The notes under the pieces are model-generated. The model had not been told where the DNA came from, searched no databases, and was given only the letters and a program-made list of their open reading frames with translations. This document shows, in pieces, positions 4,996 to 54,629 of a stretch of 64,000 nt of DNA (its first letter is position 1; each line of letters begins with the position of its first letter). The position numbers and the translations under genes are program-made. The stretch is from Octopus sinensis (taxonomy: Eukaryota), in assembly GCF_006345805.1 (NCBI RefSeq), contig NC_043018.1, positions 23,932,001-23,996,000 on the forward strand, given 5' to 3'.

Positions 4996-5049
4996 CAATG
5001 CATGTGAGAATACTCAGAGATTCTTGGGAAGGCAGTATTGTTGCTTCAC
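4996..5049 (-). CDS. CASP8: Caspase linker microexon F, 54 nt (xEATILPSQESLSILTCI)
   Basis: ctaatatgcag| ... |gtcaga; phase 1-1 and open. Confidence 0.55.
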
Positions 5050-5078
5050 CTGCATATTAGAGGTGTGTGTGTGTGTGT

Positions 5079-5123
<45 letters not shown>

Positions 5124-5405
5124 CCTTGTCATATTACATGATTGCTGTAAATGAATATCATTCATTTCCAATATTCTGCAAAGGCAAGTCTAACCATGGG
5201 GGAAAATTACCTTGCTTGGATGCAGGTAGGGGCTGATGACTAGAAGGGCATCTGGTTCGAGAAAATCAGCCTAAGTAAACTGGTGTGTGCGGGCGAACAT
5301 AAAGATTCCTATATTATGCATACCACATGCATCATATACTTTATTAAAATATTTTATGTAGCTTAAAATTGTAAAAACACGAAATACAAAATAAATATTC
5401 CTCAC

Positions 5406-14346: not shown

Positions 14347-14489
14347 TTCTCATTCAAAGATGCTAGAGAGAAGTGATTTATTAGGAAAGCATGTCTGTTT
14401 CAAACAACAAACAGCGGAAGCTGATTAAATCAAATAAATATAATTTGAAAAGAGAAATAGGAAGAGAAGAGAAGAGGATAACTGCTTAC

Positions 14490-14704
14490 CTTCTAATTTA
14501 CTTGCTAAATCTTTTCTGTTAATTGAAGACAAAGTATTCACAAGAGAGCCAAAAGACCTTTCATTTATAACATCAGCATCCAGCAAGATAGTAAAGATTG
14601 ACAAAGCATCAATATTATTTTCTTTTATGTGACTCCGGTAAAAAAACCTCAGTTTTTTAACATCCTCTGATCTCAGATCCAATGCCAAATCAAAGAGTAA
14701 TGAT
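14490..14704 (-). CDS. CASP8: Caspase-8/10- or cFLIP-like gene, DED2 exon
   Basis: Acceptor aaatttcag| and donor |gtaagc; 215 nt, phase 2 to 1. Encodes RSLLFDLALDLRSEDVKKLRFF...LSSINRKDLASKLE, a second DED with RxDL. Confidence 0.8.
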
Positions 14705-15097
14705 CTGAAATTTATGAAACAATAAGCCTGTTATTTTCTTTGCTAATATTAAGTTGTTTCACATGAAATGTCACATTTTTAATAATTTGTTATTTCAGTC
14801 ATTTAAAAACTGTTTTGTATTTAATCCTGACTCTTTTTCTTTCCCAACAATATTGGTATACAAAATTCATACCCACAGTAGGCGCGGGCATGGCTGTGTG
14901 GTTAGGGAGCTTGCTTCCTAGCTACATGGTTTCGGGTTCAGTCCCACTGCGTGGCACTTTGGGTAGGTGTCTTCCACTATAGCCTCGAGCCGACCGGAGC
15001 TTTGTGATTGAATTCGGTAGGTGGAAGTTACTGCCGTGTGTGTATGTGTGCATATAGCTGCTCAGTGCCTCTCCAAAAGAGAGAGAGAGGAGGCCTT

Positions 15098-16308: not shown

Positions 16309-17473
16309 TCTTGATGCAGTATGGCAAAACCCAAAGGAAACAGTGATCCAAATAGAGAGATGCAGAAAAGCTAGCCCAAAGTAGAGAACGGTGAAGAAAA
16401 GTCAATCATTAATAGCTGATGTTCCATAGTGGGCAATGAGCTTAAGCTAAACTAAGAGAAGACAGGCAATTCAAAACATGTTTGATCCTCAAAATCCATA
16501 GGTGATGCTTGAACCTGGCTCCATATCACATGTCACTTGATAGTTTCAGAATGAAGAGTGAGTAAGGGCTTATGCCTAAAACAGGTAAAACTGGGTTATA
16601 TGGAGTTTATCTTTAACCCCTTAGCATTCGGATTACACTTTCAAATGTAATGCTTTTTTATTCACATTTTGTTTTTGCATCTGGTTTGCAAGATTCTTTA
16701 AGAGATTTCGATGATGCAATTGTTTGCTTTCAGAATGACACTGCAGGGTAGGTGTGAGAGGTCAGATCTGGCTAGTTTAAACATAAAACAGGTAGAATAT
16801 TTGGGCCAGATATCGCTGTTTCAAATGCTAATGGGTCAAAGATACATATGTTAAAGATATTTAACCCTTTCATTACTGTATATATTTTGAGATGCTCTGT
16901 ATTTCTTTCAATTACTTTAAATATAACAAAGAATTTAGTAAAATAACTTAGTTATCATTAAGCTAGTGTTAGGAACGTAAATTGTTATTAAGGTTTGGTG
17001 GAAGATTTTAATTCAAAACTTTTGAAAACAAGACATTTGTACTACAGAGCCAGAGCAGGTTTCAGCTGGGTGGGTAACAAAAGGGTTAAAAATATTGCTG
17101 GTGGTGAGGCAGTTTATGACTCACCTAATTAACAGATGAGCCACAATATTCTGAGTGTCAATCTAAACATTCTTTTCTTCAATTCATTTATTTCAGTTTT
17201 TTTTTTTTTCATTTTAACAGAAAATAAAGACAATTGCAGTGTGGAAAGTGTTTATAAGCCAATTAAGAAACACACAAATATTTTGACAAATTAAATTTAA
17301 ATGTCGAAGTGAATCTAACGGTCTTGTGTGTTTCTTAAATGGCTTATAAGCACCTTCCACACTGCAATTGTTTTCGTTCCAGCACATGATCTCAGATCAA
17401 GTCACTCGCTATGCAAGTGCATCTCCATAAAAAGAAAATAAAGAGAAAAGAAAAAAACTGAAAAGCAACTTAC

Positions 17474-17783
17474 CTAAAAGGATTTAATTCATTTGGTTCA
17501 AAATCATCAATGTTAGACGAACCAGAATTCAATATTTTCAATAAATCAATCCTATGAATTTTCTTGAGACATTTTAATAAAAATTTGTAGTCATTTGAAG
17601 TGATAATATGGTAGTTTGAAAGTGCATCGATTATATTTAAGCCATTATGCTTTTCTATTTCTCCTGCTGGTAAGATATCATGGCACAGGAACTTCAAATA
17701 ACTTACATCCCTCTCTCGAAGGTTTTCAGCTATTTTGACTAAAGCAGAACTTAGATTGTGGTCAACATCCATCATTATCGTAT
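17474..17783 (-). CDS. CASP8: Caspase-8/10- or cFLIP-like gene, DED1 exon (probable first coding exon; ATG at 17775)
   Basis: Acceptor ttctctttaccag| at 17784 and donor |gtaagt at 17473. Translation (LSSALVKIAENLRERDVSYLKFLCHDILPAGEIEK...LLKCLKKIHRIDLLKIL) fits a death-effector domain including the RxDL motif. It splices in phase 2 to the DED2 exon (PF-R-SLLFDL). Confidence 0.8.
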
Positions 17784-17806
17784 CTGGTAAAGAGAAACAA
17801 AAATAA

Positions 17807-17842
<36 letters not shown>

Positions 17843-18031
17843 GAAAGAATGGAGTCGAACGACGATTTAACAAAATTCCTTTAAAAAAACAGACAAATTT
17901 CCACACGAAAGCAAGTGGCATGTAGCTTCAACCGTGTTTTCTGACGTAAATTTGCTACCCGGGTATCGGTTAACCGAATTATCCATACTAGGATAATTCA
18001 CTCAAATACTTATATATATATATATCTATAT

Positions 18032-22820: not shown

Positions 22821-24717
22821 ATATATATATATATCACGTGACACATCTATCTATATATATATATATATTTATAGAGAGAGAGAGAGAGATAAATATAGAT
22901 ATGTATATATATATTTATATATATATATATACTTACAGAAAAGTATGCTATTAAAACGAATTATCATTTATATGCTTTTTTTAAATCACTGTGGATAAAT
23001 ACCAGCAATGACCTTCTCAGGCCCTCCAATATTTTGTAAACAAAAATAATGGGGGTGGGGTAGGAAATAATGTTGCAAAAAAAATCATAATTTTTCAAAT
23101 GTTTTTTTAATAGCATATAAATGAATTTATGGGGAGAAAAATATTGACAAACATCAATACATTCGAGACTGAGAAAGAAACGAGAAGGGTTGTCTTAGGA
23201 TGTGCTAAAAACAACAGCCAAATCTCTCTTAAATCACTCACTTTTTCCTCTGAAAATATTAACAATTTTTAAATATTTTTGTTACCGAAAAGGTTCCTCC
23301 CATGGTTTTGAAGAGCAAAAACACTGGCGAAAATCGGTCATAAAATTCCCCCACCTACCACCTTTTCGAAGGCTGTGGTTAAAAAAAAACTTGGGAAAAT
23401 CCCGTTCAAAACGGAGTAGTTTGCACTTATTTGGTCTTTCTGTTTCGAAACTCTTCTCCTCACCTACTCAGAAAAAATTTTTCCCGCAAATTTCTTTAGA
23501 ATCATAATCTATACCGTTTGAAAGGTATTTCCATAAAATTTCATCAAAAGATATCCATTTTCCTAAAAGTTATGAGGGGAAAAAAGTCAGATCGTGTGAA
23601 TTTTCCGAAACTCTGCTCCCTACATCCTCAGAAAAAATGTTGCCCATAAATCCCTATATACTCTGAATCCACAGCATTTAAGCGGTATTTGTTGAAATTT
23701 TCGTTAAAAAGTATCCATTTTTCTGGAAGTTATGAGGCAACAAAGTCGGCGAGTGTTACACATCTGTAGGTATGACTTCCCCTCTGCGCACGCGCGAGCG
23801 AGCGTGCATGTGTGTGTGTTGTGTGTGTGTGTGTGTTGATATACGTCCAGATTTTTTTACACATATATATATGTATATATATCATCGGCAGAAGTTAGAG
23901 AATAAGTCAAAAGCTGAGAGTTTCGTGTATTGGCACTTATCAAACACGCATTTAGCCATTGTCACTCTGTAATTTCTGCCTAATATTGTGGGGGAATGGA
24001 CGGACGGACGGATTGACACATTCTCATATTTGTTGCTATAAAAACATCTCTGGTTATCAAAGAAGGGTTTTTTTTAGGGGAGATTTTCAGTTTAAATTTT
24101 TCTGTTGACGAAGATACATCGTTTTGTCAATGGACCCGGAAGTTGTTCGCAAACAGCCACAGTAACTTTCGTCAGCTGAATACTCGTCATTGATTGGTTA
24201 AAATTACCCAAATATAACTTTAACACGAAGTAACTTCTAAAATACAAAATTTTGTCAAAAACGTTAAGAGTAAACCCTGTTCAACTTGAGACATTCAACC
24301 AGTATCAGAAGTTTCAAACTGTTTAGTTTAAAAAGATTGATTTAAAAACGTGTGCTTGAGATCGATAATTACAAACATGGCGTATAAAGATATCTTATTT
24401 TCATAGTATTTTTATCAATACTATTCCGTAAATGTTTTTCTTGTGACCCACCCATTTTCCACTTTTTAGACAGCGGGATGAGGTGGAGAGGAGTATATGA
24501 ATCAATTTTGGAGTTGCCTCATAGAAAATTTGAAATTTTGGCATATTCAGAATCTCCGTCATCGAAAATAGTAATCAGCTGGAAAAAAATTTCAAAACAA
24601 AAAGGTCGATTTTATAATAAATCAAAAAACAAAAGTTAACAAGCTTTTGACGGTCTTGAAGCTATTTCAAAATTATGATGCTAGGTGTTTCCATTATTTT
24701 GTCCAACCCCTGTATAT

Positions 24718-24750
<33 letters not shown>

Positions 24751-24751
<1 letters not shown>

Positions 24752-26423
24752 TAGCAGTATCGCCCGGCGTTGCTCGGGTTTGTAAGGGAATTAACTATAT
24801 AAGCATTTTTAGAGAGTTACTTCCCGTATAGATGCCAATTCGGGCTTTCTTAGCCAATTCTGTTTTGGTGTCTTCTCCTACGATTTAGATTCCTAACTAC
24901 TCCCACATTTTGCGGTGCAGTTTAACCAAATTCGTGTATCTTATAGTCGTGATTCATATCGAGCCCGTCTGGCTATTAGCGCGCGTCTACGATGAGTCTA
25001 CGATTTTTAAAATAATTTAACATCATTTTTTATTCCATTTTAATGCATATTTTTTCGTGTGTCGATGGCGGCGGAGTTGGCGTCCATGGTTACGCTACAC
25101 CTGTGTTGCTTCTCCCCCTTCTTCCCTCTCTCGTGAAGCTGTGGGGAAGGGAGTGTAAGGAAATCAACGTCGTAAAGCGTTGTCAAGGAGACCAGCGTTC
25201 TTTTAGAACAACGACTTCATGGCTTGAAGACACCAAAACAGAAATGGCTAAGAAAGCCCGAATTGGCATCTATAAGGGAAGTAACTCTCTAAAAATGCTT
25301 ATATAGTTATTTCCCTTACAAACCCGAGCAACGCCGGGCGATACTGCTAGTATATATATAAAACTGTAGTTGTGTGAGTGTCTGTCCCTTTCGATTTAGA
25401 TTCCTAACTACTCCCACATTTTGCGGTGCAGTTTAACCAAATTCGGGTATCTTATAGTCGTGATTCATATCGAGCCCGTCTGGCTATTAGCGCGCGTCTA
25501 CGATGAGTCTACGATTTTTAAAATAATTTAACATCATTTTTTATTCCATTTTAATGCATAAATTTTCGTGTGTCGATGGCGGCGGAGTTGGCGTCCACGC
25601 TCACATCTGCACCTGTTTGCTTCTCCCCCTTCTTCCCTCCCTCGTGAAGCTGTGGGGAAGGGAGTGTAAGGAAATCAACGTCGTAAAGCGTTGTCAAGGA
25701 GACCAGCGTTCTTTTAGAACAACGACTTCATGGCTTGAAGACACCAAAACAGAAATGGCTAAGAAAGCCCGAATTGGCATCTATAAGGGAAGTAACTCTC
25801 TAAAAATGCTTATATAGTTATTTCCCTTACAAACCCGAGCAACGCCGGGCGATACTGCTAGTATATATATAAAACTGTAGTTGTGTGAGTGTCTGTCCCT
25901 TTCGATTTAGATTCCTAACTACTCCCACATTTTGCGGTGCAGTTTAACCAAATTCGGGTATCTTATAGTCGTGATTCATATCGAGCCCGTCTGAGTATTA
26001 GCGCGCGTCTACGATGAGTCTACGATTTTAAAAATAATTTAACATCATTTTTTATTCCATTTTAATGCATATTTTTTCGTGTGTCGATGGCGGCGGAGTT
26101 GGCGTCCATGGTTACGCCTACACCTGTGTTGCTTCTCCCCCTTCTTCCCTCTCTCGTGAAGCTGTGGGGAAGGGAGTGTAAGGAAATCAACGTCGTAAAG
26201 CGTTGTCAAGGAGACCAGCGTTCTTTTAGAACAACGACTTCATGGCTTCAAGACACCAAAACAGAAAATGTCTGCGATGAGTCAACGATTTAAAAAAAAA
26301 TTTACCATAAATTTTTTTCCGTTTTCAATGCATTTTTTTTGCTATTTTTTGGCTATAACTCTCTAAAAATGCTTATATAGTTATTTCCCTTACAAACCCG
26401 AGCAACGCCGGGCGATACTGCTA
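24751..26423 (+). mobile_element. Non-autonomous Helitron tandem array (3 units) with an inverted 3' end at the left
   Basis: Units end in the hairpin cccgagcaacgccggg followed by cgatactgCTAG at 25350 and 25861 (26423 lacks the final G). 24751-24874 is the reverse complement of 25227-25350. Confidence 0.85.
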
Positions 26424-26872
26424 ATATATATATATAGAATGGTTGTATACTGTCAATCTAACAAGAACGTGACAGTAGGGGGTACACCACCGCTGTATAG
26501 CCCTAGGAAGCATCGAACGCCTCCTGATGGCTTGGACACATTTTTCCCTGTGTCCTTATATACATTTACGAAGGGGAGACAAACACCCCCGGCTGCCGGA
26601 ACTGCATCTAGGGACACGTGTTTCAGGATCGTTGTCCTTCATCGGCCTAGAGTAGCAGACACCGGTCAGCCGGTGATATTATATCTTTATTATGGGCACG
26701 ATGGCCCGAATGCAGAGGGGACATTACAAGACGGGACGTGGGGTACATAAAGTAAAAAATAAAATATGAAATGAAGATGAATTATGTGTAATGAGTTGGA
26801 TGGAACGGCTTACGAGCCCCCCAAAACTCGCAGTTTCGTTTAAAATACAATTTTACATTTTAACATTACATA

Positions 26873-28162
26873 CGAGGGGCGTTCAATATGTAATGCCCCT
26901 GACCCACTTCCCATAGCAGTAGAGCAACGAAACTTGGCACAGTTATTAGTCTTTTTCTACCTAGGAACCACCCAGAGTTACGCATTTCTCTCATCGTGTG
27001 ATGCAGCTCTGGAGACCGTTTTTGTAGAAGACCCCAGCTTGGTCCTTCAACCACGACGTGACTTCAGAAATCAAGGCTGCATCATTTGGAAAACACTTTC
27101 CTTTCAAAAACAACTTCATGGCTGGGAAGAGGTGAAAATCAGAGGGTGCAAGGTCAGGAGAGTAGGAGGATGGGGGAGGAGTTCATAGCCGCACGCCTGT
27201 GCTTCTGATCTGGCGACAGCGAGTTGTGGACCGGAGCGTTGTCCTGCAGGAGGAGGATGCCTTTGCTGATCTTGTCCCGCCTCTTGATTTTGATAGCTTC
27301 TCTTAATTTCCTCAAAAGTGAAGCATAATATGCTCCTATAATTGTGGTACCCTTTGCCAGGAAATCTATCATCACTACTCCGTCCTGGTCCCAGAAGACT
27401 GTGAGCATGACCTTGCCAGCGGAGCGCTGCACCCTTGCCTTCTTTGGAGGAGGTGAGTCACGGTGCTTCCACTGCATTGACTGGGCTTTGGTCTCTGGAT
27501 CATAGTGATGGACCCAGGTTTCATCCTGTGTAATCAGTCTTTTGAAAAAATTTGACTCATCTTCTTGGCATATCCCCAAATTCATCCTCGAGCACTCAAC
27601 GCGTTCTTGCTTCTGGAAAGATGTGAGCAACCTGGGAATCCATCTGGCAGACACCTTTTGCATATGCAAATTGTCATGAATGATAGTTTCCACAGACCCG
27701 GTACTAATCTTGACCTCATGGGCTATTTGGTGAATAGTTATGCGTCGATCTTCCAAAATGGCAGCCTCAACTTGACGGACAGATGCCTCATCAATGGAAG
27801 AAGGGGGCGACCAGATCTGGGAGCTGTTTCCACAGAGTTCCGACCATGTTTGAATTCATGATGCCAGCGTTTTACAAGGTCATATGATGGGGCATCATCA
27901 CCATAAGTTACTTTCATTTCATCAAAAGTCTCCCGTGGTGTGCGTCCTTTCAAATATAAAAACCGGATCACTGCTCGACACTCAACAGGCTCCATTTCAC
28001 ACTTGACTCAGTTCAAACACCTGTAAATCTGAAACCACAATTAGTTCAGAGCTGTAATTTTCCCCTTAATCTATAGAGATATAAGCAATTGCACATGCAA
28101 AATTTCAGCTAGATCAAACAATTGCAAGTAGGTCAGAGGCATTACTTATTGAACGTCCCTCG
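26873..28162 (-). mobile_element. Full-length (1290 bp) mariner transposon, frameshifted transposase
   Basis: TA TSDs at 26871-72 and 28163-64; imperfect TIRs cgaggggcgttcaatatgtaatgcc / ggcattacttattgaacgtccctcg. Motifs WIPRLL, TQDETW, QDNAPVH and YSPDLAPSDF are spread over 3 frames (27738-27995, 27154-27756, ~26950-27180). Confidence 0.95.
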
Positions 28163-28277: not shown

Positions 28278-29540
28278 TTAAATATCCTTTTCAATTTTGT
28301 AAATGTCTCTTTTTCTATAACTACCCCTTTTCACATTGTCACCATACAGTTTTGGCAACTTCACCCTGTTCAATACTTTCCTACCTGCAAGTCTTTTTTC
28401 CACTTCTGTGTCTTTGATATACATCACGAATGCTTTCAGGTTTTTTCCTACAGGTCTTCTTCCCTTTTTACAAGCTTCCAACTGCTCTTTCACTTTTGTC
28501 TCCCATTCTTGGTCAGCCTCTGTCATTGTCTGCTCTCTCGCCTTCTCTTTTACTTCCTTTTCTTTGCATGTTCTCTCTTCTTTTTCTTCTGTTATCTTGC
28601 TTTTGATTTTTTTCTTTTTTAGAACTTTCGGTGGTGATTCCACCCTTGTTCTCTTCCTATCTTCTGTTCTTTCATCCTCTGCACTTGCACGTTCTTCTTC
28701 CACATCCTCAATTAGCTGCTCCTCCGTTTGCGCTTCCACTGCTTTCGTTTCCTCCTGCACTTCTCCCTCCTCCACACACGTATCTTTCCACTCCTTCGTT
28801 ACAGCCTCCGGTGCTATCGTTTTCTCCAGCGGGCACACATCCTTCATGTGGCCTCTTAATTTGCAATTATAACAGACTGGGGGTCTTCCCTCTACCACGA
28901 CTCTAAACCGTGTCTCATCAGGGAAGACCAACTCCTCCGGGATGTTGTACAGGTCTGGCATGGTTATATGTGCCAGAACCTGCACCGCATATCCCCACCA
29001 TTTAACTTCTGTTGACTTCTCCACCTTCAACACTTCTACACTTTCCTTGCAGTTGAAAACTACTGCCGCTAATATCCTCTCCATGTTAAGTTCGGGCGAA
29101 ATCCTACTAATTCTTATTCTGACTGCCCTCTTTCCGCAGTAACTAGGTAATAAAGTCCAACTTTCAGATTTCAGAATCTTTGTCGCATTCTTTCTTGCTT
29201 CATTTTCATTTTTAAAGTGTACCACCACTGTGGCATATTTCCATCCTCTGTTGAAAAAGGTAGGTTCACCCTCAATTCCTTGCAGACATTTCTCTATTTC
29301 TTCCGTCTCTGCTACTTCTATTTTTCTTGACGCCACACACCATGTCCTGTATGTTATCATACGTTTCTCCGCATTGTTTTCTTCTTCTTCGGACGGTGTG
29401 ACTCTCACGCAGTTACCCTCCCTCTTCAAACTGTCGAAATACTTTTCTAAAGTCTTCTTCTCGACTACCACTTCTTCCATTTCTAGTTCACTCGCAACCA
29501 GGCCTCTGCCTGCTGCTCTCGCATACGTCTGGTCTTGCAT
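28278..29540 (-). CDS. Retroelement ORF1/gag-like protein (420 aa from ATG 29540), CX2CX4HX4C zinc knuckle and E/K-rich tail
   Basis: VVVEGRPPVCYNCKLRGHMKDVCP resembles Tx1/L1-type ORF1 proteins; the frame is uninterrupted. Confidence 0.85.
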   Translation of the reverse strand: MQDQTYARAAGRGLVASELEMEEVVVEKKTLEKYFDSLKREGNCVRVTPSEEEENNAEKRMITYRTWCVASRKIEVAETEEIEKCLQGIEGEPTFFNRGWKYATVVVHFKNENEARKNATKILKSESWTLLPSYCGKRAVRIRISRISPELNMERILAAVVFNCKESVEVLKVEKSTEVKWWGYAVQVLAHITMPDLYNIPEELVFPDETRFRVVVEGRPPVCYNCKLRGHMKDVCPLEKTIAPEAVTKEWKDTCVEEGEVQEETKAVEAQTEEQLIEDVEEERASAEDERTEDRKRTRVESPPKVLKKKKIKSKITEEKEERTCKEKEVKEKAREQTMTEADQEWETKVKEQLEACKKGRRPVGKNLKAFVMYIKDTEVEKRLAGRKVLNRVKLPKLYGDNVKRGSYRKRDIYKIEKDI

Positions 29541-29941
29541 TTTCAAAATCTCCAACTCCAAAAAACATAGGTCGGCTGGTGATATTTGCTTCGACTTCAC
29601 TATTGTATATATCTATATTCAGTGAAGTCTATTCACTGATTATCAAAATAAGAAATATTGAATTTCTAAATCTCTTGTAGAGACATGTACGGTGGTGGGG
29701 CGATAGAATGGTTGTATACTGTCAATCTAACAAGAACGTGACAGTAGGGGGTACACCACCGCTGTATAGCCCTAGGAAGAATCGAACGCCTCCTGATGGC
29801 TTTGACACATTTTCCCCTGTGTCCCTATATACATTTACGAAGGGGAGACAAACACCCCCGGCTGCCGGAACTGCATCTATATATATATATGAAAAAACAA
29901 GTCAAGATAGAAAATGCTAAAATAATTTTATAAAGAACATT

Positions 29942-37415: not shown

Positions 37416-38344
37416 TTCTTCATAAATGACTTGCCCGACGACCTCACGCAACACACCCTTCTATTTGCCGACGATATCAAACTGGTCGCTCCTCGCAATG
37501 ATATAGAGGATCTTCGTCGATGCCTCCACCAAATTTGGAAGTGGTCTAACGAATGGGACCTGTGTCTGAACGTGTCAAAGTGCTGTCATCTGCCTGTTGG
37601 CTCTCCTCCTGCAACTCAACTTGATTTCGAGCCGGGTCGTCTGCTGCTGGAGAGGACCGATCAGGTAAAGGACCTGGGTATCTTGGTGGATTCCTCCATT
37701 TCGCCTTCGGCCCAGTGCGTCCATGCTGCCAACAAAGCACGCGGAATTCTGTTCTTGATTCGACGGTCATTCGGAATGCTCACAGCAGCCATATTCCTAC
37801 CACTCTATGTCACGCTGGTGAGACCCATATTGGAGTACGGGATTCAAGCCTCTTCTCCTTATCTCCTCAAAGACATACAGCATCTCAAAAGAGTCCAGAA
37901 GCTGGCTACCCGCATGGTTCATGGTCTCAAAAATTTGTCCTATGAAGAAAGGCTGAGGACGCTCGACCTTTATTCTCTTGAAAAACGCCGCCGCCGTGGT
38001 GATCTCATTCTCACCCACAACATCATAAGCGGAAAGTGTAACCTCTCGAAAGAGCTGTTCTTCACTCCTGCTCCAGAGCGTCGGCTGCGGGATCATTCCG
38101 AAAAGCTCTACCTGCGACGATTTCATCTCAATCGAAGGAGAGGAGCTTTCTCCGTCCGAGTTGCGGATCCGTGGAACAAGCTGCCAGACGAGATGGTGAA
38201 GATGCCAACGACCGCTTTGTTCAAAGCCTCCCTTGACCTCAAGTGGCCTGAACTCTTTACATGAACACCACCCTGTACTTAACTCCATGTCCCCCTACAT
38301 GGCCTTGCTATTTGCTTTTGAGCCAAATTAACTAACTAACTAAC
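37416..38344 (+). mobile_element. 5'-truncated CR1-clade LINE (RT C-terminus, 3' UTR, (ACTA)n tail) inserted in a SINE
   Basis: Open frame to 38264 with FINDLPDD, LFADDIKL, RPILEY and SLEKRRRRGDLI; tail aactaactaactaac. The flanks rejoin into one SINE tail. Confidence 0.9.
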
Positions 38345-38504
38345 CGCCTTTAATTGAGCAAATCGACCCCAGGACTTATTCTTTTGTAAGCCCAGTACTT
38401 ATTCTATCGGTCTCTTTTGCCAAACCGCTAAGTTACGGGGACATAAACACACCCGCATCAGTTGTCAAGCAATGCTAGGAGGATAAACACAGACACACAC
38501 ACGC

Positions 38505-38542
<38 letters not shown>

Positions 38543-39477
38543 GACGGGCTTCTTTCAGTTTCCGTCTACCAAATCCACTCACAAGGCTTTGGTCGGCCCG
38601 AGGCTATAGTAGAAGACACTTGCCCAAGGTGCCACGCAGTGGGACTGAACCCGGAACCATGTGGTTGGTAAACAAGCTACTTACCTCACTTAAATTTTAA
38701 TATTTAGCACTCAACTTATTTAAATGTCCTTGAAACCAATTCAAAGGTATAGAATAAAATATTTTCACAAATTATGAAAATATACCACCTGTGGTGCACA
38801 CAGCAGTCGTATGAAGTTTGCAACATGGTGCAGGTGGCAGTTACTGTGTCAAAGAATAAAAACATACTCCGATCAATAAACCATCTCAGTGCATGGAAAA
38901 TAAAAACTTACAATTAAAAGAAAATCAGAAATAAAACATTTATTTACAAAAGAGAAAAACAGTTCATGTTTTAAGTTGACAGATTAAGAATTTAAGTTTT
39001 ATGTACATATATATATATACATATATAAAGTATATACACGCATTCTATTTTAAGGTTATTTTTATTTTAACCATTTTTTTTTTCAAGCTAATAAAGTCTT
39101 GTATCGGTACTTATGTAGACAAATAATTATGTATATATGAGCATTACCTCTACAACCAATGTATGAATATATATCATCATCATCGTTTAACGTCCGCTTT
39201 CCATGCTGGCATGGGTTGGACGGTTTGACTGAGGACTGATGAGCCAGAGGCTGCACCAGGCTCAATGTGATCTGACAAATTTTCTACAGCTGGATGCTCT
39301 TCCTAATGCCAACCACTCCAAGCATGTAGTGGGTGCTTTTACATGCCACCATCACAAGGGCCAGTCAGGCAGTTCTGGCAACAACCACGCTCAAAAGGTG
39401 TTTTTACGTGTTACCTGCACGGGAGCCAGTCCGCCAGCACTGGCAACAATCACGCTCATCTTCCCACAGGCTTCAGA

Positions 39478-39885
39478 CATGGAGGAGGTAGTGCTACCCT
39501 GGGTCAAGAGGGTGGCTGTGGGAAGACCCTATGTCTGGCAAGAGGACTCTACCCAATGCCACACAAGCAGGAGAACCCAGTCATGACTACATCACCCCTA
39601 ACTACCTAGACTGCAAACCCTTCAATTATGTGTGGGGCACAGTTAAGCGACAGCCAACAAAACTCCTTCTAACACCAAAGATGAACTGAAGGCAAGGATT
39701 ATGGCAGCATTCACCAACAAGGAGACCATCCAAAAGAGTTGCAGGAAACTCCGAAATCGTCTAGAGGTCATGGTTGAAGACAGTGGCGATTTTATCGAAA
39801 TTTACTCTTTAGTATTTTAAGATATTTTTATGTAATTTTCGTAAGTATATGTTAAAATAAGATGTTAGGGTTATTTTCATTTTTG
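39478..39885 (+). mobile_element. Degenerate Tc1/mariner-superfamily transposase C-terminal fragment
   Basis: EEVVLPWVKRVAVGRPYVWQEDSTQCHTSRRTQ plus a degraded SPD-N-P-DY-VWG remnant. Confidence 0.7.
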
Positions 39886-40055
39886 CATAATTTACATGAC
39901 AGTTTATTCACTGCATCCTATATATACATCATACATATATACATTATACACACACAACTATATACATGTAAACATATGCACACATATAAATACATACACA
40001 TATTTACATAAATACATGTGTATGTATACGTTTGTTCATTTGTTTAATGTATGCG

Positions 40056-40086
<31 letters not shown>

Positions 40087-40301
40087 GAATATGCACACAC
40101 CTATATATACAGTCTGTTTCAATAGCAAATTTTATATATACATAGCTCTAACAGTGAATCATACACACATATTATATAAGTTTACCACACACCACACTAC
40201 AAGTATATCACATACACACACAAGCAAAAATTTAAATGGGGATTAATACAACCAGTTCCATTACTCTATAATTGCTATTCAGAGTTCTATATCTCAGTCT
40301 A

Positions 40302-43300
40302 TCAGCTTCGACGTGTCTGGCCTGCAACAGCAGTAGCAGGCTCTTCCATCTTAATGTCATTTTCATCTTCGTCTTCACATTTCGAGGCTGCTAGTCTTGC
40401 TGATTTAGTTCTATGTCGGCCGGGTGTAATGTTCCAAACCTTGTTTGCCTCAGGGATCCTTAAAGGAGAACTGAGGTGGATGACATTCTCAGCATTGTCT
40501 TGCAGTGAATTTAAGCTTGTTGACTGAAAAGATGTATTCCTTAAACTGTTTGGGGAGTTGTGCCGAATGGGGGAAGGTGGCGTCAGACTAATGTTTTGGT
40601 CGGAGTGAAATGTGACATTTTTAGACCTGCTGGCAACAAATGGAGTACTGATAGCACGGTTCATATAATTCTGTTCATCCGAACTGTTTATGACATCCTG
40701 TTTTGATTTTGAAGAATTGTTTGTAGAGCTGTCAGAACTTATTCTAAGAGACTGCCTCTTTTCTCCATTAATTTGCTGAAGTCTTTCAATTGATTTTTTC
40801 GCAGAATTCAAAATTGCTTTCTTAGATAAGGAAAGGGTTTCTAAATTTCTGCCCGGCTTTACAGCAGAAACAGGAACTTGGTTTGAGTTACGATTGTTAT
40901 TCACATCATCAAATTCTTGCTCAGGAGAAGGAGATTTTTGAGCGATTTCTTGTTGTTCTTCATTTTCTTTTTGTTGCTGCTGCTGCTGCTGTTGTTGTTC
41001 TTCAAACTTACGTAAATCAAATTCGATTTCATCAGCAAGTTGCTTGTCCGTACCAAGAATCTGTTGAATTTCACTTTTGAAATCTTTAATGAGTTCTCGG
41101 AGATACAACATCAGCTCTTTTAACACTGGAGACCGTTTAGTTTCTAAGACAAGTTTTAGTGACGTAACAATCGGAACTATATTTTCTATCAAATTTTTCT
41201 TCATCACTTTTGAAATAAGATTTTTGTTCATTTTTGCAATAACAGCAGCAGCCATTTCCTCTTCGTCCATGTTACCTTCATTTTGTTTGTTGACAATTAA
41301 AGATATTTTGATTTCTTTACTACCAAGGATGGTTAAAGAATCCTGCAACACTGTAGTTCCGTCTTCATCAAGTTCAATGATTCCATCAACAACTCCTGCT
41401 AGGATTTCCTGATTCAGTTTTCCAGATAAGTTGATTTTATGCTCATCAGTCATGTGTTGAAGCATAAAAGTGTAAAGACGCCACCGTAGATCAAATTTGG
41501 ATTTTCCACGTAGATCAAGGCTGTTTTTGTTGTTTTGATCTTGGGTAAATCTGTTATACATCGGATGTTTCTGGTAACGATTGAAGTAAAATATGCATTC
41601 AATAAAATGATAGAACATGATGTTTGGATTACGAACCAACAGACAATGAACAAAGCAAAACTCGGAGAACTTTTGCAGTTCTATTTGTTCATCTAAGTAA
41701 GTTGTGATGAAACGATAGAACAGTGGACCTTTCCATTTCAGATAATCTTCCTGGATGAGCATGGTGAGTAACGTCATGGTTTGTTTCCTGATCAAAGGAG
41801 AAACGTCATTGAGACATGTTGCTACCTTGGGAATATACTGATCGACAAGGGTAGTGTATCGTATACACAGGTCACACAAAATAAAGACCACGTTGTTGCG
41901 GATGGCTTCTTCTGATGATGTTTCCAGTTCTCGTACAAGTGCTGCAACACACTTTTTTGCAAGATCTTCGTTCTGAAGGCAGAATTTTCCGAGTGTAATG
42001 AATGCATGCCCTCTCACACGACTGCTTAACTTGGAACCGGCAAAATGAAGCAAAGTTTCATGATTTTTACCTGACTTTGTTTTAGATAAATTATCAAGAC
42101 CATTTGTTTGGGAGGCGACTGATCCTTGGGAACATTTCAATACAAAATCCGAAATGCAAGGAGAAGCAATAATGCTCTGTACTACTAACAAAATATGTTT
42201 GATGGGATATGCTGGATGAAGTTGACAAACTTCTCCAAGAGTAAACAAATGACAAATAACTTTTTCTTCATCAACAGCAGTATTTTCTTTTTCAGACAAA
42301 ATTAATTTGGATAAATATTTATCAGAAGCTTTCAGAATGTCCTGGCATAACGTTTTCAACTTGTTTTTCTCAAATTTATTGTCTTCAGTTAGTTTCTTGA
42401 TGGTTGCCATAGTCATAGAAATTAAGTCGATAGGAGAACCGAATTGCAACAAACGCTTGCTGAGGTCAGCTACAAGTTTTTGCTTCTCTTCAAAAGGCAC
42501 TGATTCAGCCACATTCAATAAAACTTTCAAAACATATTTACAAGTTGATGTACTCTCATTGCCACTATCTAATGAACAATTTTCATTCCAAAACTGAACT
42601 ACAAAAGAGCAATCAAATTTTACTTTTGCAGTTGAAAGTTCTGAAAGCATCATCCAAGCTGCATTGTTATGTTCAGTACCTACGTGAGTTTTAAGCACAT
42701 TGATGTGAAACACTTTGATCAGTTTCAACCTTGCCCACTGGCTAACAGCTCGTTGGAAATATCGCCGAAGGCTTTCTTCCTCTTCTCCGGCCATTATTTG
42801 TAATAAACTCCATGTCAACTGGTACTGACTTGATAGAGACCTATTATATGTACACAGATTCTGAAGGAGGACTTCTTCGAGGCACTTCATGCATTTTTCT
42901 TGTAAAGTAGTTTCACAATCCAAAATTAAAGGTAAAACTCCATTAAGCCAAGCTTTCTGAATGAAATAGCATGTTGGTAAATCAAATAGAAGGGAGCTGA
43001 GCGACTGCATAGCTTGCTTCCGAACAGACAAAGATGGGTCTCGGCATCTTTCCTCCAAAATATTTACACCCATTTGGCAGTCGTTCTGCAGCAACCGTAC
43101 AAGACTTTCAAAAGCCTGAAGAGCTGATTTCCTCACAAAAACTTTTTCATCTGATGATCTCCTTTTAAGCATTGAAAGAACACCATAATTATCAGAAAGA
43201 TTATTATCAACAGGACTAAAATCCAAGTTGACAAACGGTGTCTGTCCAGTGAAGACAATACCTTGATTAGGAGTTTTATTATTTTCAGAGTCTGAAATTG

Positions 43301-44831
43301 GAGTCACATTGTCAATTTCTAAATTTGGAAGACTTTCTAAATTTGAAGGCTTGCTGTCATATTCTTCATTTTGTGGCGTAAACAAACTTTGGCACGCATT
43401 TACAACTTTTTGATTCCTCGACCCTACACACTGGGAAAAGATTACAATTGCTCTTGAACGGACTGATGAAGAATTGTCGGAACAGCGGTCAACAACGTAA
43501 CCGATATAATGCTTATGTTTTAAATATTCTTGTAGATCGGCAGGAACATCTACTGACTCTATCTCAGTTTTCGAAAGCAACAACGAAAAAATTTCAAGAG
43601 CCATCATTCGGTTGTTAGTTTTCGAAGTACTTATCAACACACCAACCCATTTTATCATTTCGGCATAACTGGTTTTGTCAAAAGCATCCATTATAGTCAA
43701 AATAGATTCTGCCACTTTGCTTCTATAATCTGTTTTGTCTGGAGTTTTAATACATAAATGTTGAATTAAAGTCCTCGCAGACTTCATTGCTGAATCTTTG
43801 TGCTGATGAAGAATGTCACATATAAATGAAATAGAATTCAGTCGGCATTGAGCGTAAGCAACAGGAATTGTTTGGGAGAAAACCACTTTGTTATTGAGGC
43901 CAAGCATTAATATGCTGCTCATTAGTTGTTTGTAAACAACGTTGATGATGGCAGCTGAGTTACCTTGAAAGCCGGAACATAACTGTTTTAAGGCAACATA
44001 CGCCAACTCGACTGGATACTTAGCGGTGGAAGCAGTAAACGTACGGTTAATATGGTTGTCCAAACCTGCGTAGGGACGGATAAGCTCGGCCATAACTTGG
44101 ATGCTTTTGTGAATTGAAGAATCGGATCCACGCAAAGAAAAATTCTGAACAAGTTGAATAAAAGCTTTTAGCGCACTAACCAAGGCTTTCTGTAGGATAA
44201 TGTTATCTTGCGGAGAAAGTTCCTCTCCGTCACTTTCATCGCTTCCTTCGTCCCCGTCATCGTCATCCATCTCGACCGAAGGATTTCTACTCAATTTACG
44301 ATTTTTGGCGCGGTTACTCTTCTGAGAATTCTTTTGTGAGAGTTTACGTTTTCTGTTTGCGCCGGCGCTCGACGTCCACCTCCGCAAAACGTCCAGGCAC
44401 GAGTTCAATAACATCGGGTTAAAAATTTTAAAAGCGCCACTACCAGCAATGGATACGAGTTGAAAATAATTGCAAGAAGCCAACAGACCCGCATGTCTTT
44501 TTGTTGCACCCACTTTGGCTTTGGAAGAAGCAGATTCTATCAAATACGCCAGATAAGCGATGAAATGTTTGTAGGAAACATCACTTTCAACCAGAACAGT
44601 CCAAAAACTAACCTCGTTTGTTTCTCTGTTTATCCAGCAATCGAGCGAAGACTGAAGTTTAAGCAGATCTTCGATGTAGAAGTTGCTCTCTTCTAAATCG
44701 ATTATCAAATCCTCCGGAATAGTGTCTAATTCAACGAAATCTTTTTCCCATGCCGACTTTACCCAGCTATCTTCCAGTTGATCAAGAGGCAAATCGTTTA
44801 GAATCGCGATAATTTGTTCGATGCCCGCCAT
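40302..44831 (-). CDS. NCAPD3: Condensin-2 complex subunit D3, 1509 aa, single uninterrupted ORF
   Basis: HEAT-repeat protein of the expected length with the Cnd1-type segment (RGHAFITLGKFCL...IRNNVVFILCDLCIRYTTLVDQYIPKVATCLNDVSPLIRKQ...IQEDYLKWKG), VRKSALQ and VRKQAM repeats, and a low-complexity C-terminus with polyQ. Confidence 0.93.
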   Translation of the reverse strand: MAGIEQIIAILNDLPLDQLEDSWVKSAWEKDFVELDTIPEDLIIDLEESNFYIEDLLKLQSSLDCWINRETNEVSFWTVLVESDVSYKHFIAYLAYLIESASSKAKVGATKRHAGLLASCNYFQLVSIAGSGAFKIFNPMLLNSCLDVLRRWTSSAGANRKRKLSQKNSQKSNRAKNRKLSRNPSVEMDDDDGDEGSDESDGEELSPQDNIILQKALVSALKAFIQLVQNFSLRGSDSSIHKSIQVMAELIRPYAGLDNHINRTFTASTAKYPVELAYVALKQLCSGFQGNSAAIINVVYKQLMSSILMLGLNNKVVFSQTIPVAYAQCRLNSISFICDILHQHKDSAMKSARTLIQHLCIKTPDKTDYRSKVAESILTIMDAFDKTSYAEMIKWVGVLISTSKTNNRMMALEIFSLLLSKTEIESVDVPADLQEYLKHKHYIGYVVDRCSDNSSSVRSRAIVIFSQCVGSRNQKVVNACQSLFTPQNEEYDSKPSNLESLPNLEIDNVTPISDSENNKTPNQGIVFTGQTPFVNLDFSPVDNNLSDNYGVLSMLKRRSSDEKVFVRKSALQAFESLVRLLQNDCQMGVNILEERCRDPSLSVRKQAMQSLSSLLFDLPTCYFIQKAWLNGVLPLILDCETTLQEKCMKCLEEVLLQNLCTYNRSLSSQYQLTWSLLQIMAGEEEESLRRYFQRAVSQWARLKLIKVFHINVLKTHVGTEHNNAAWMMLSELSTAKVKFDCSFVVQFWNENCSLDSGNESTSTCKYVLKVLLNVAESVPFEEKQKLVADLSKRLLQFGSPIDLISMTMATIKKLTEDNKFEKNKLKTLCQDILKASDKYLSKLILSEKENTAVDEEKVICHLFTLGEVCQLHPAYPIKHILLVVQSIIASPCISDFVLKCSQGSVASQTNGLDNLSKTKSGKNHETLLHFAGSKLSSRVRGHAFITLGKFCLQNEDLAKKCVAALVRELETSSEEAIRNNVVFILCDLCIRYTTLVDQYIPKVATCLNDVSPLIRKQTMTLLTMLIQEDYLKWKGPLFYRFITTYLDEQIELQKFSEFCFVHCLLVRNPNIMFYHFIECIFYFNRYQKHPMYNRFTQDQNNKNSLDLRGKSKFDLRWRLYTFMLQHMTDEHKINLSGKLNQEILAGVVDGIIELDEDGTTVLQDSLTILGSKEIKISLIVNKQNEGNMDEEEMAAAVIAKMNKNLISKVMKKNLIENIVPIVTSLKLVLETKRSPVLKELMLYLRELIKDFKSEIQQILGTDKQLADEIEFDLRKFEEQQQQQQQQQKENEEQQEIAQKSPSPEQEFDDVNNNRNSNQVPVSAVKPGRNLETLSLSKKAILNSAKKSIERLQQINGEKRQSLRISSDSSTNNSSKSKQDVINSSDEQNYMNRAISTPFVASRSKNVTFHSDQNISLTPPSPIRHNSPNSLRNTSFQSTSLNSLQDNAENVIHLSSPLRIPEANKVWNITPGRHRTKSARLAASKCEDEDENDIKMEEPATAVAGQTRRS

Positions 44832-45006
44832 AGTTTGAATTCTAGCCTCGTTTTCATATCTCTCAACCGCTTCCCTTTCCTTTAGATTCGCTCCCCTGTT
44901 TCTGATGAGCCGCTTATACCGCTAAATAAAAACTACAGTTCGCTTTAAGACTGTCTCATAGATGGAGGTGGGAGGGGACAGCGGTTAAATTGCTTGTTAA
45001 TTAAAA

Positions 45007-45555
45007 TCTTTATATATAAAAGTGAAGTTGTGTGTCTGTCTCCTACGATTTAGATTCCTAACTACTCCCACATTTTGCGGTGCAGTGAAACCAAAAGCGG
45101 GTATCTTATAGTCGTGATTCATATCGAGCCCTTCTGGGTATTAGCGCGCGTCTACGATGAGTCTACGATTAAAAAAAAAATAAGCGGGTATCTTATAGTC
45201 GTGATTCATATCGAGCCCTTCTGGGTATTAGCGCGCGTCTACGATGAGTCTACGATTTAAAAAAAAAAAGCGGGTATCTTATAGTCGTGATTCATATCGA
45301 GCCCTTCTGGGTATTAGCGCGCGTCTACGATGAGTCTACGATTTAAAAAAAATTTACCATCATTTTTTCGCTATTATATAAGGGAAGTAACTCTCTAAAA
45401 ACGTCTACGATGAGTCAACGATTTAAAAAAAATTTACCATCATTTTTTTTCCATTTTTAATGCTTTTTTGTGCTATTTTTTGGCTATAACTCTCTAAAAA
45501 TGCTTATATAGTTATTTCCCTTACAAACCCGAGCAACGCCGGGCGATACTGCTAG
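45007..45555 (+). mobile_element. Non-autonomous Helitron with internal ~75-bp triplication, 175 bp upstream of the NCAPD3 ATG
   Basis: A|TC...CTAG|T termini and subterminal hairpin; same family as 24751-26423. Confidence 0.85.
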
Positions 45556-52803: not shown

Positions 52804-53967
52804 ATATATATATATATATATACATGCATTCAAAAATACCCTGTGGCTGATGTTGAAGTTCCAATGGAGGAGCCTTGGATCTAAGTTAGAAACCAGCTCT
52901 TTCTCTATTGGCAAGAAATCATGAAATAAAAACTGAATAATGACACATATATAGTAGTGTAGGCATGGCAGCGTGGTAAAGAGGTTCAAATTGCAAGCTT
53001 AGGGTTTGGGGTTCAGGCACACTTCATAACACCTTTAGTAAATACCTTCTGCTGTGGCCAGAGACCACCCAATACCTTGTGAGTGGGTCTGACGGAGGAA
53101 AATTGTACAAAATCCATTGTCATCATCATCATCATTATTTAACATCCATTGACCATACTGACATGGTTTCAACAGTTTGACCAGGGCTGTCAAACTGGAA
53201 GGCTGCACCAGACTCCAGTCTGATTTGGCATGGTTTCCTACAGCTGGAAGCCCTTCCTAACACCAACCATTCTGAGAGTGTAATAGGTGCCACAACTGTG
53301 ATTTTGCTCGGCTTGATGGCTCTTCTTCTCAAGCACAATATAACACCAAAGGTCTTGGTCATTGCTTCCATAAGGCCTAATGCTCAAAAGGAACTCAGCT
53401 ACTTTGCCTCCTTGAGCCCCAACACTTGAAAGGAACTCGGTCACTTTGCCTCCATGAGGCCCAACACTCAAAAGGAACTCAGCCACTTTGCCTCTGTGAG
53501 GCCTAACGCTTGAAAGGAACTCAACCATTTTTCCGCCATGAGGCCCAATGTTTGAACTGTGCTCTTTACGTGCCACTGGCACAGGTGCCAATTATGTGGC
53601 ACCAGCATCGGCCATGACTATGATTTCACTTGGCTTGACAGGTCTTCTCAAGCACAGTGTATTGCCAAAGGTCTCAGACACTAATCATAGCCTCTGTGAG
53701 ACTCAAAGTTCAAAGATCATGCTGCATCACTTTGTTGCACCACTTTGTTGCACGTCTTCCTGGGTCTGCTTCTGTGACAGATTCCCTCCACAGTTAGAGA
53801 TTGGCACTTCTTTACACAGCTGTCCTCATCCATATGCATCACATGACTTGTGTGTATGGTAAGTTCCAAACCTGCATATATATGTGTGTGTGTGTGTTTG
53901 TGTGTGAATATATATATATTTATTGTTTGTGCATGTGACAATGCATGTTAATCAATAGAGAATATAC

Positions 53968-54144
53968 CTGTATGATATTATCTAAACCGAAGAGGACACC
54001 ATCTTCATAGGAATTCTTCTTCCAGCGGCTGCGGTGGTCAATTTGGATGTGGTCTGGTACAGGAGTTGTCTTTGTGAAATCTATTAGCCAGACCCCAGTT
54101 TTGCCAGTGCTGTCATATATTGCCAATAACGAACTTCCAATTAA
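53968..54144 (-). CDS. IP3K: IP3 3-kinase exon (SSLL and IDF motifs)
   Basis: ttttcag| ... |gtatat; 177 nt; LIGSSLLAIYDSTGKTGVWLIDFTKTTPVPDHIQIDHRSRWKKNSYEDGVLFGLDNIIQ matches the ITPKA/B/C C-terminal consensus (IGSSLL...GVWLIDFGKT..DHR..W...N.EDGYL.GLDN). Confidence 0.92.
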
Positions 54145-54629
54145 CTGAAAAAAAAAAAAAAGAGAAAAAAATTATTGTTAAATACAAACTTCTTTTGAGT
54201 CGTCCCTCACTACAATACTTGTTGATGCTTATTTTAATTTTCAGAATAAGCACAAGGCCAGAAATTTGGTGGAGTGAGGCAGGGAAGTGTATAATTGATT
54301 GTATGTAACTAGTATTTATTCTTTCCACCCTAGAGGGATGGAAAGTAAAAGCTGATCTAAGTGGAATTTGAACTCAAAATAAAGTGAAGAGTTGCCCAAC
54401 ACTCTCATGGTTCTTCCAATCCACCACCTAAAAGGTTATTATTATGTTGACTTCAAATTTTGGCACAATGCCAGCAATTTAGAAGGAAGGATTAAGTTGA
54501 TTATATCAACACTTGAATTTAACTGGTACTTATTTTATCAACCCTGAAAGGATGAAAGACAAAGTCAACCTTGGTGGAATTTGAACTCAAAACATAAAAA
54601 ACAGATGAAATGCTGCTAAGCATTTTGTG

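What the first reader, a model, noticed from the sequence alone, without database searches (positions are those of the whole stretch)
40302..44831. Essential condensin-II gene NCAPD3 is a 4.5-kb intronless, TE-free ORF in an intron-rich genome
Seen: 1509 uninterrupted codons, while both neighbouring genes are split into small exons by repeat-filled introns. There is no residual poly(A) tract, and an AATAAA lies ~400 bp past the stop (39903-39908). Known: vertebrate NCAPD3 has dozens of exons. Inference: an ancient retrocopy that replaced the parental gene, or wholesale intron loss. The intact frame argues that it is functional.
Basis: partly seen in the sequence, partly recalled or inferred. 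Interest (0 to 1): 0.7.

Follow-up and report, generated by a model that had tools for sequence, protein, structure and literature searches.

The report
Intronless condensin gene shared by coleoid cephalopods
The octopus gene for condensin-II subunit D3 really is one uninterrupted 4.5-kb coding exon; cuttlefish-type cephalopods share this state while limpets and scallops have about 35-40 exons, so it is an old, functional product of an RNA-mediated intron wipe-out, which is a neat but already known kind of event.

Summary
Window 40302-44831 (-) is a 1509-codon ORF encoding full-length NCAPD3 (E=5e-248 to human CAP-D3). It contains no sequence repeated elsewhere in the window, and its two neighbours, an IPK-domain gene and a caspase-8-like gene, are split genes in repeat-rich DNA. 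The window is Octopus vulgaris or a very close relative.

The intronless state is not specific to this octopus. The coding sequence is also one exon in the O. vulgaris reference, a second Octopus species, Argonauta hians and a 418-kb genomic contig of the cuttlefish/squid clade. The five coleoid proteins form one clade (100/100).

The outgroups are intron-rich. Lottia has about 38-40 exons over 21.6 kb and Pecten at least 35 over 59 kb, and they share intron positions. All coding introns were therefore lost before octopods and decapodiforms split.

dN/dS of 0.12-0.14 shows a working gene. No second cephalopod copy appeared among annotated proteins.

I could not decide between retroposition with loss of the parent gene (favoured) and in-place replacement by a cDNA. 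Local synteny is uninformative and no Nautilus sequence was available. I found no earlier report. I file it as a new member of a known kind (retrogene replacement / orphan retrogene), of moderate interest.

The parts
40302..44831 (-). Single-exon coding sequence of NCAPD3 (condensin-II subunit D3), 1509 codons plus stop
   Evidence: ORF; human CAP-D3 E=5e-248; Pfam Cnd1; 1366/1370 identical to O. vulgaris CAI9738936.1; no repeats; dN/dS 0.14
44832..45092 (-). Unique proximal upstream region (5' UTR and probable core promoter), bounded upstream by a tandem repeat
   Evidence: Aligns with the O. vulgaris reference. Colinear with a second Octopus species up to 44903 and with Argonauta up to 44854-44879. 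No transcript data, so the start site is not known
45093..45352 (.). 86-bp tandem repeat, 3 copies, 260 bp upstream of the ATG; first repeat upstream of the gene
   Evidence: TRF; related copies at 24.7-26.4 kb of the window
40064..40301 (-). Proximal 3' flank (probable 3' UTR), rich in TA/TG microsatellites
   Evidence: Colinear with the L008 contig of a second Octopus species to its end; sequence read
39903..39908 (-). AATAAA, candidate polyadenylation signal about 400 nt after the stop
   Evidence: Read directly; use not shown, no transcript data
53956..54168 (-). Context: exon of the upstream neighbour, an inositol-polyphosphate-kinase (IPK) domain gene on the same strand
   Evidence: Pfam IPK 1.6e-12; 85% aa identity to the Argonauta locus; IPK gene annotated upstream of NCAPD3 in O. 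vulgaris and Argonauta
17473..17880 (-). Context: first death-effector-domain exon of the downstream caspase-8-like gene
   Evidence: Pfam DED 2.8e-16; gene annotated with DED + Peptidase_C14 in the O. vulgaris reference, with its start mapping to about window 31729
14428..14730 (-). Context: second death-effector-domain exon of the downstream caspase-8-like gene
   Evidence: Pfam DED 5.2e-13

Best explanation
This is the working NCAPD3 (CAP-D3) ortholog of the octopus, and apparently its only one. CAP-D3 is the HEAT-repeat subunit of condensin II.

Its coding sequence is one exon because a fully spliced NCAPD3 mRNA was reverse-transcribed in the stem lineage of coleoid cephalopods, before octopods and cuttlefish/squids diverged. 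The most likely route is retrogene replacement: the cDNA inserted at a new locus, picked up a promoter there, took over the function, and the ancestral gene of about 35-40 exons was then lost.

Shown here:
- the identity of the gene;
- the single-exon state in five coleoid lineages;
- the multi-exon state in a gastropod and a bivalve;
- a single coleoid clade;
- purifying selection.

Inferred:
- the RNA intermediate;
- the move to a new locus;
- the loss of the parent gene.
For: - Identity: E=5e-248 to human CAP-D3 over nearly the full length. All NCAPD3-specific Pfam families are recorded on the orthologs.
- One exon in O. vulgaris reference: the gene range equals CDS length, and the frame is open from M1.
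- One exon in Argonauta hians: 5046 nt = 1681 codons + stop.
- One exon on a 418-kb genomic contig of the decapodiform clade: 4656 nt = 1551 codons + stop. That protein is 83% identical to the cuttlefish Acanthosepion esculentum protein.
- A second Octopus species is colinear with the window.
- Outgroups: Lottia has about 38-40 exons in 21.6 kb. Pecten has at least 35 exons in 59 kb. 9 of 21 resolved Lottia intron positions coincide with Pecten positions, against 2.4 expected by chance.
- Tree: the coleoids form one clade (100/100) inside the molluscs.
- Selection: dN/dS is 0.141 (window vs second Octopus, dS 0.32), 0.066 (vs O. vulgaris reference) and 0.121 (within decapodiforms).
- Copy number: no second cephalopod NCAPD3 was found. 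The word-indexed searches returned one per species. In the exhaustive search of representatives, every hit I looked up after the coleoid one belongs to a non-cephalopod taxon or falls outside the molluscs in the tree.
- Neighbours: IPK and the caspase-8-like gene in octopods differ from those in Lottia (NAD_binding_10) and Pecten (aminotransferase).
- Precedent: retrogene replacement is defined in PMC5803294 (amphioxus SYCP1, a 3.2-kb single coding exon) and PMC3548309.
Against: - No retroposition scars are present: no poly(A) remnant and no target-site duplication. After a few hundred million years none would be expected.
- Relocation is not demonstrated. Lottia and Pecten do not share NCAPD3 neighbours with each other either, so local synteny carries no signal.
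- Absence of a parental copy rests on annotated proteins only. I could not search whole cephalopod genomes.
- Coleoid root-to-tip lengths in the tree (about 1.3-1.6) fall within the range of the other molluscs (0.75-1.6). There is therefore no clear post-relocation acceleration.
- The decapodiform and octopod loci could not be shown to sit at the same position.
Confidence: 0.55

Rival explanations
1. In-place wholesale intron loss. A full-length NCAPD3 cDNA recombined with the resident gene (gene conversion) in the coleoid stem and erased all coding introns. The gene kept its ancestral locus and promoter, and no second copy ever existed.
For: - This fits the same core facts: a single-exon CDS across coleoids against about 35-40 exons in Lottia and Pecten.
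- No parental relic or second copy was found.
- No poly(A) tract or target-site duplication is present.
- Continuous purifying selection and unexceptional root-to-tip lengths fit a gene that never had to acquire a new promoter.
Against: - Converting a 20-60-kb gene with about 35-40 introns along its whole length in one step is rarely documented in animals (established knowledge, not tested here). cDNA-mediated loss usually removes a few adjacent introns, biased to the 3' end.
- The octopod neighbours (IPK, caspase-8-like) are not next to NCAPD3 in Lottia or Pecten. This is weak evidence, because those two outgroups also differ from each other.
Confidence: 0.3
2. Retro-duplicate with a surviving parent. 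The intronless gene is an extra copy, and a multi-exon NCAPD3 still exists elsewhere in coleoid genomes.
For: I could not run tblastn against whole cephalopod genomes. Long multi-exon genes in 2.7-5.7-Gb repeat-rich genomes are easily missed or fragmented by annotation.
Against: - Only one NCAPD3 protein per cephalopod species was returned.
- In the exhaustive search, every representative I looked up below the coleoid one is non-cephalopod or falls outside the molluscs.
- The intronless copy keeps full-length similarity to human CAP-D3 and is under strong constraint, as expected of the sole functional gene.
Confidence: 0.07
3. Gradual loss. The roughly 35-40 introns were removed one by one or in small batches along the cephalopod stem.
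For: The coleoid stem branch is long (1.06 substitutions per site). No Nautilus or other early-branching cephalopod was available to break it up.
Against: - All coding introns are gone in every coleoid examined, with no lineage retaining any.
- The neighbouring genes in the same region keep long introns, so the genome shows no general drive towards intron loss.
Confidence: 0.05
4. Artefact: cDNA contamination or misassembly created an intronless copy in the assembly.
For: None found.
Against: The same structure sits in genomic context, between repeats and neighbouring genes, in independent assemblies. These are the window itself, the O. vulgaris reference (aligned through both flanks), Argonauta with the same IPK neighbour, and a 418-kb decapodiform contig.
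Confidence: 0.01

Closest known systems
Retrogene replacement / orphan retrogenes (for example amphioxus SYCP1, PMC5803294; human orphan retrogenes, PMC3548309)
   Same: - A single coding exon of several kb stands in for a gene that is multi-exonic in related phyla.
- No parental copy is detected.
- The gene is intact and constrained, and it is shared by a whole clade, so the event is old.
   Different: - Relocation away from the ancestral locus is part of the definition, and it could not be shown here.
- The coding sequence is longer (4.5 kb against about 3.2 kb for AmphiSYCP1).
- The gene is a constitutive chromosome-condensation factor and not a meiosis-specific one.
- The event appears to predate the split of the two coleoid superorders.
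NCAPD3 / CAP-D3 of vertebrates and other molluscs (human structure 9f5w chain D)
   Same: - Full-length HEAT-repeat architecture and a Cnd1 domain.
- 36-39% identity to gastropod orthologs and an end-to-end alignment with human.
- Placed inside the molluscan NCAPD3 clade.
   Different: - Gene structure only: one coding exon against about 35-40 in Lottia and Pecten. Human has about 35 by my own recollection, not tested here.
- The C-terminal tail is divergent and of low complexity, with a poly-Q run.
Processed pseudogenes
   Same: Intronless copy of a multi-exon gene, presumably made through an mRNA intermediate.
   Different: It has no frameshifts or stops in 1509 codons, dN/dS is 0.07-0.14, and it is conserved across coleoids. 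It is a functional gene and not a pseudogene.

Membership tests
NCAPD3 (condensin-II subunit D3) | Full-length sequence similarity to an experimentally characterised CAP-D3 | tested here: met
   Human 9f5w_D: E=5e-248, query 15-1289 aligned to chain 16-1272
NCAPD3 (condensin-II subunit D3) | Cnd1 C-terminal domain plus the NCAPD3-specific N-terminal and HEAT families | tested here: met
   Pfam Cnd1 2.6e-14, above its cut-off. PF26777, PF26778 and PF26779 are recorded on the 99.7%-identical O. vulgaris protein
NCAPD3 (condensin-II subunit D3) | Orthology: groups with NCAPD3 of related phyla and not with condensin-I CAP-D2 | tested here: met
   Falls inside the mollusc NCAPD3 clade at 100/99. 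CAP-D2/Ycs4 chains match only at E=7.7e-4
NCAPD3 (condensin-II subunit D3) | Assembles with SMC2/4, CAP-H2 and CAP-G2 and acts in chromosome condensation | not testable with these tools
   Needs biochemistry or genetics
Retrogene replacement / orphan retrogene | Single coding exon where orthologs in outgroups are multi-exonic | tested here: met
   against Lottia at about 38-40 exons and Pecten at 35 or more, with shared intron positions
Retrogene replacement / orphan retrogene | [quoted passage not shown] | tested here: inconclusive
   No shared neighbours with Lottia or Pecten, but those two share none with each other either. Chromosome-scale synteny was not available
Retrogene replacement / orphan retrogene | Parental multi-exon copy absent from the genome | tested here: inconclusive
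   No second cephalopod protein. Whole-genome tblastn was not possible with these tools
Retrogene replacement / orphan retrogene | Retroposition scars (3' poly(A) tract, target-site duplications) | tested here: not met
   None seen in the flanks. Erosion is expected at this age, so this is weak evidence against
Retrogene replacement / orphan retrogene | Retained function (intact frame, purifying selection) | tested here: met
   dN/dS 0.066-0.141; intact ORFs in five lineages
Processed pseudogene | Disabling mutations or neutral evolution | tested here: not met
   No stop in 1509 codons; dN/dS well below 1

The most novel reading that the evidence does not exclude
An essential chromosome-architecture gene was re-founded as a retrogene in the coleoid stem, which is the lineage whose genomes were massively rearranged and enlarged. 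In taking on a new promoter and losing all intron-borne regulation, it may have changed condensin-II dosage or timing. That could be one contributor to the unusual chromosome organisation of coleoids.

The link between condensin II and nuclear architecture type comes from my own knowledge of published cross-species 3D-genome work. It was not tested here.
Probability: 0.05. Interest if true: 0.75.

Novelty: new member of a known kind. Interest (0 to 1): 0.4.

Why it matters
The case shows that even a long (4.5-kb CDS), constitutively required gene with about 35-40 introns can be replaced wholesale by a spliced copy. That copy has then been maintained for what is probably more than 250 million years (the divergence date is from my own knowledge).

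Practical uses:
- It is a clean shared derived character for coleoid cephalopods.
- It is a convenient single-exon marker or cloning target for condensin II in these animals.
- It is a natural experiment on how an essential gene works without its introns and possibly with a new promoter.
- It flags an annotation error: the O. vulgaris protein CAI9738936.1 starts 139 residues too late.

It is not a new kind of biology.

Tried and rejected
- Microsynteny, window against the decapodiform contig and against Lottia (tblastx). Only repeats and noise were found outside NCAPD3.
- Extending the decapodiform contig. Downstream, 10 kb more (L012) held no IPK or DED exon. Upstream, the extension failed because the recorded gene calls there contain in-frame stops and the look-up refuses them.
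- Searching for a Nautilus ortholog or a second cephalopod copy. No hit that I looked up was cephalopod. The unnamed P0034, P0043 and P0009 fall outside the molluscs in the tree.
- Using the higher identity of the gene block to the O. vulgaris reference as evidence of selection (98.8% against 94-96%). I rejected this because the 2.8 kb of TE-bearing 3' flank is just as similar, at about 99.5%. The effect is regional and haplotype-related, so I used dN/dS instead.
- Reading the long coleoid stem branch as post-relocation acceleration. I rejected this because total root-to-tip lengths are within the range of other molluscs.
- The 1370-aa NCBI model as a sign of a 5' lesion or an intron. I rejected this because the reference frame is open and identical from M1, and the window's own genome is annotated with 1509 aa.
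- Literature searches for NCAPD3 with 'intronless', and for cephalopod retrogene replacement. They found precedents in other taxa only.
- Whether the cuttlefish Logan contigs are DNA or RNA was not settled. The source paper used the run for chromosome coverage, which suggests DNA. The conclusion for decapodiforms rests on the 418-kb ENA contig.
Full report
**1. The observation**

The window contains one very long ORF at 40302..44831 on the minus strand, with an ATG start and 1509 codons plus a stop. Local G+C is about 0.37. At that composition about 7% of random triplets are stops, so an open frame of this length has a chance probability near 1e-46 (my own arithmetic).

The protein aligns with human condensin-2 subunit D3 (PDB 9f5w chain D) at E=5e-248 over residues 15-1289. 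It also carries the Cnd1 domain above Pfam's cut-off. Condensin-I Ycs4 chains match only at E=7.7e-4. The gene is NCAPD3.

A self-comparison of the window finds no repeated sequence at all in 40001-45000. Most flanking kilobase bins are 10-100% repeat.

The 3' flank is TA/TG microsatellite-like and has no poly(A) tract.

**2. Source and neighbours**

The closest protein is 'condensin-2 complex subunit D3-like [Octopus vulgaris]', with 1366 of 1370 residues identical. The window aligns with that reference locus (OX597835.1) through both flanks. The window is therefore O. vulgaris or a very close relative.

The NCBI model starts at M140 of the ORF. The reference frame is nevertheless open and identical from M1, and the first 139 residues align with human CAP-D3. 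The window's own genome carries a 1509-aa annotated product. The short model is an annotation start-site error.

The upstream neighbour, on the same strand, is an IPK-domain gene. It has an exon at 53956-54168 (Pfam 1.6e-12), which is 85% identical at protein level to Argonauta.

The downstream neighbour is a DED + Peptidase_C14 (caspase-8-like) gene:
- Its annotated start maps to about 31.7 kb.
- Its two DED exons lie at 17473-17880 and 14428-14730.
- Its introns hold a mariner-type transposase (27154-28007), a gag-like CCHC ORF (28278-29600) and many repeats.

**3. How widespread is the intronless state?**

| Species or contig | Evidence for one coding exon |
|---|---|
| Argonauta hians | Gene range 5046 nt = 1681 codons + stop; IPK gene upstream as in Octopus |
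| 418-kb ENA genomic contig | Gene range 4656 nt = 1551 codons + stop |
| Second Octopus species | 89% nt identity, colinear with the window across the CDS and adjacent flanks |

The ENA contig's protein is 57% identical to the octopus protein. It is 83% identical to a protein assembled from runs that include ERR12945500. The Sepia officinalis genome paper identifies that run as short reads of the cuttlefish Acanthosepion esculentum. The ENA contig therefore belongs to the decapodiform clade. The cuttlefish contig is colinear with it beyond both ends of the CDS.

In a maximum-likelihood tree the five coleoid proteins form one clade (100/100) inside the molluscs (100/99). That clade is sister to bivalves plus gastropods.

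**4. The ancestral state**

Lottia gigantea NCAPD3 spans 21.6 kb and resolves into about 38-40 coding exons. Pecten maximus NCAPD3 spans 59 kb with at least 35.

Of 21 well-resolved Lottia intron positions, 9 coincide with Pecten positions within four alignment columns. About 2.4 are expected by chance, and the maximum in 2000 randomisations was 9. HSP edges are imprecise, so this is a lower bound.

Patella has several annotated isoforms, which also implies introns. Vertebrate NCAPD3 has dozens of exons by my own knowledge.

The many-intron gene is therefore ancestral, and coleoids lost every coding intron.

**5. Is it functional, and is it the only copy?**

Nei-Gojobori estimates:

| Comparison | dN/dS |
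|---|---|
| Window vs second Octopus species (dS 0.32) | 0.141 |
| Window vs O. vulgaris reference | 0.066 |
| Between the two decapodiform sequences | 0.121 |

The frame is intact in all five lineages.

The block 37.5-44.5 kb is about 99.5% identical to the reference, against about 96% further out. This includes TE-bearing 3' flank, so it is a regional effect and not evidence of selection.

Two word-indexed searches of 5.8 billion proteins returned one NCAPD3 per cephalopod. In the exhaustive search of 1.84 billion representatives, the only coleoid-type representative is the decapodiform protein. The next-best hits that I looked up were all named non-cephalopods or fell outside the molluscs.

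This argues against a surviving multi-exon parent, but it is not a whole-genome search.

**6. Mechanism**

Losing about 35-40 introns completely, in a genome whose neighbouring genes keep long introns, points to a single RNA-mediated event using a full-length spliced cDNA. There are two routes:

- (a) Retroposition to a new locus followed by loss of the parent. This is 'retrogene replacement' or an 'orphan retrogene', as defined in PMC5803294 and PMC3548309.
- (b) Homologous replacement of the resident gene by the cDNA.

I favour (a), at 0.55 against 0.30. Whole-gene replacement by retrogenes has documented animal precedents of similar size, and the octopod neighbours are not those seen in Lottia or Pecten.

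The synteny argument is weak for three reasons:
- Lottia and Pecten share no neighbours with each other.
- No poly(A) or target-site-duplication scar survives.
- I could not show that octopod and decapodiform loci are positionally orthologous.

The coleoid stem branch is long (1.06 substitutions per site). Total root-to-tip lengths are unexceptional, so I do not claim acceleration.

Gradual loss, a retro-duplicate with a hidden parent, and an assembly artefact are minor rivals. The last is excluded by four independent assemblies with genomic flanks.

**7. Timing**

The event predates the Octopodiformes-Decapodiformes split, commonly dated to roughly 250-300 million years ago (my own knowledge). 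No Nautilus sequence was reachable, so the upper bound is the cephalopod-gastropod/bivalve divergence.

**8. Novelty**

Searches for NCAPD3 with 'intronless', and for retrogene replacement or intron loss with octopus or cephalopod terms, found no report of this case. The phenomenon itself is well known. I rate this a new member of a known kind and of moderate interest: solidly supported, phylogenetically informative and useful for annotation, but not surprising in principle.

The most novel reading is that re-founding this architecture gene altered condensin-II regulation in the lineage with drastically reorganised genomes. That is speculative (about 5%).

Noticed in passing
L007:9584-10000 (O. 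vulgaris reference) / window 44414-44831: The NCBI/ENA O. vulgaris protein CAI9738936.1 (1370 aa) starts at Met-140 of the real ORF. The upstream 139 codons are open, identical, and homologous to human CAP-D3, so the deposited model is N-terminally truncated.
   Followed up: yes
window 28278-29600 (-): A 440-aa ORF with a CCHC zinc-knuckle motif and Glu/Lys-rich tails has no Pfam hit. It lies in non-repeated sequence inside the first long intron of the caspase-8-like gene, in a stretch with strong negative GC and AT skew (28-30 kb). It looks like a retroelement gag-like or domesticated gene.
   Followed up: partly
window 27154-28007 (-): A mariner/Mos1-type transposase remnant (Transposase_1 1.5e-24, HTH_48 8.5e-10), single copy within the window.
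   Followed up: partly
window 45093-45352 and 24700-26440: An 86-bp unit is repeated 3 times in tandem just upstream of NCAPD3. Related copies form a longer array about 20 kb away. The family was not identified.
   Followed up: no
window 37500-44500 vs L007: A 7-kb block is about 99.5% identical to the O. vulgaris reference. It covers the gene plus 2.8 kb of TE-bearing 3' flank, including a weak RVT_1 fragment at 37431-38264. Adjacent sequence is about 96% identical. This may be a shared haplotype, low local diversity, or a long conserved 3' UTR.
   Followed up: partly
L002:290-736, 906-1073, 5047-5286 (ENA contig ctg122688l): The gene calls recorded on this contig contain in-frame stop codons under the standard code. 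This suggests a eukaryotic (cephalopod) contig was run through a prokaryote-style caller with another genetic code inside a metagenome assembly. The long NCAPD3 ORF was called correctly only because it is intronless.
   Followed up: partly
window 40302-41100 (-), protein residues about 1279-1509: The C-terminal tail is of low complexity (a poly-Q run, Ser/Asn-rich) and varies in length between species. The Argonauta protein is about 170 residues longer overall.
   Followed up: no
L011:27376-28975 (Pecten maximus): A 301-aa gene with a faint PHD_NSD hit is annotated inside an intron of Pecten NCAPD3 on the same strand. It may be a nested gene or a TE-derived ORF.
   Followed up: no
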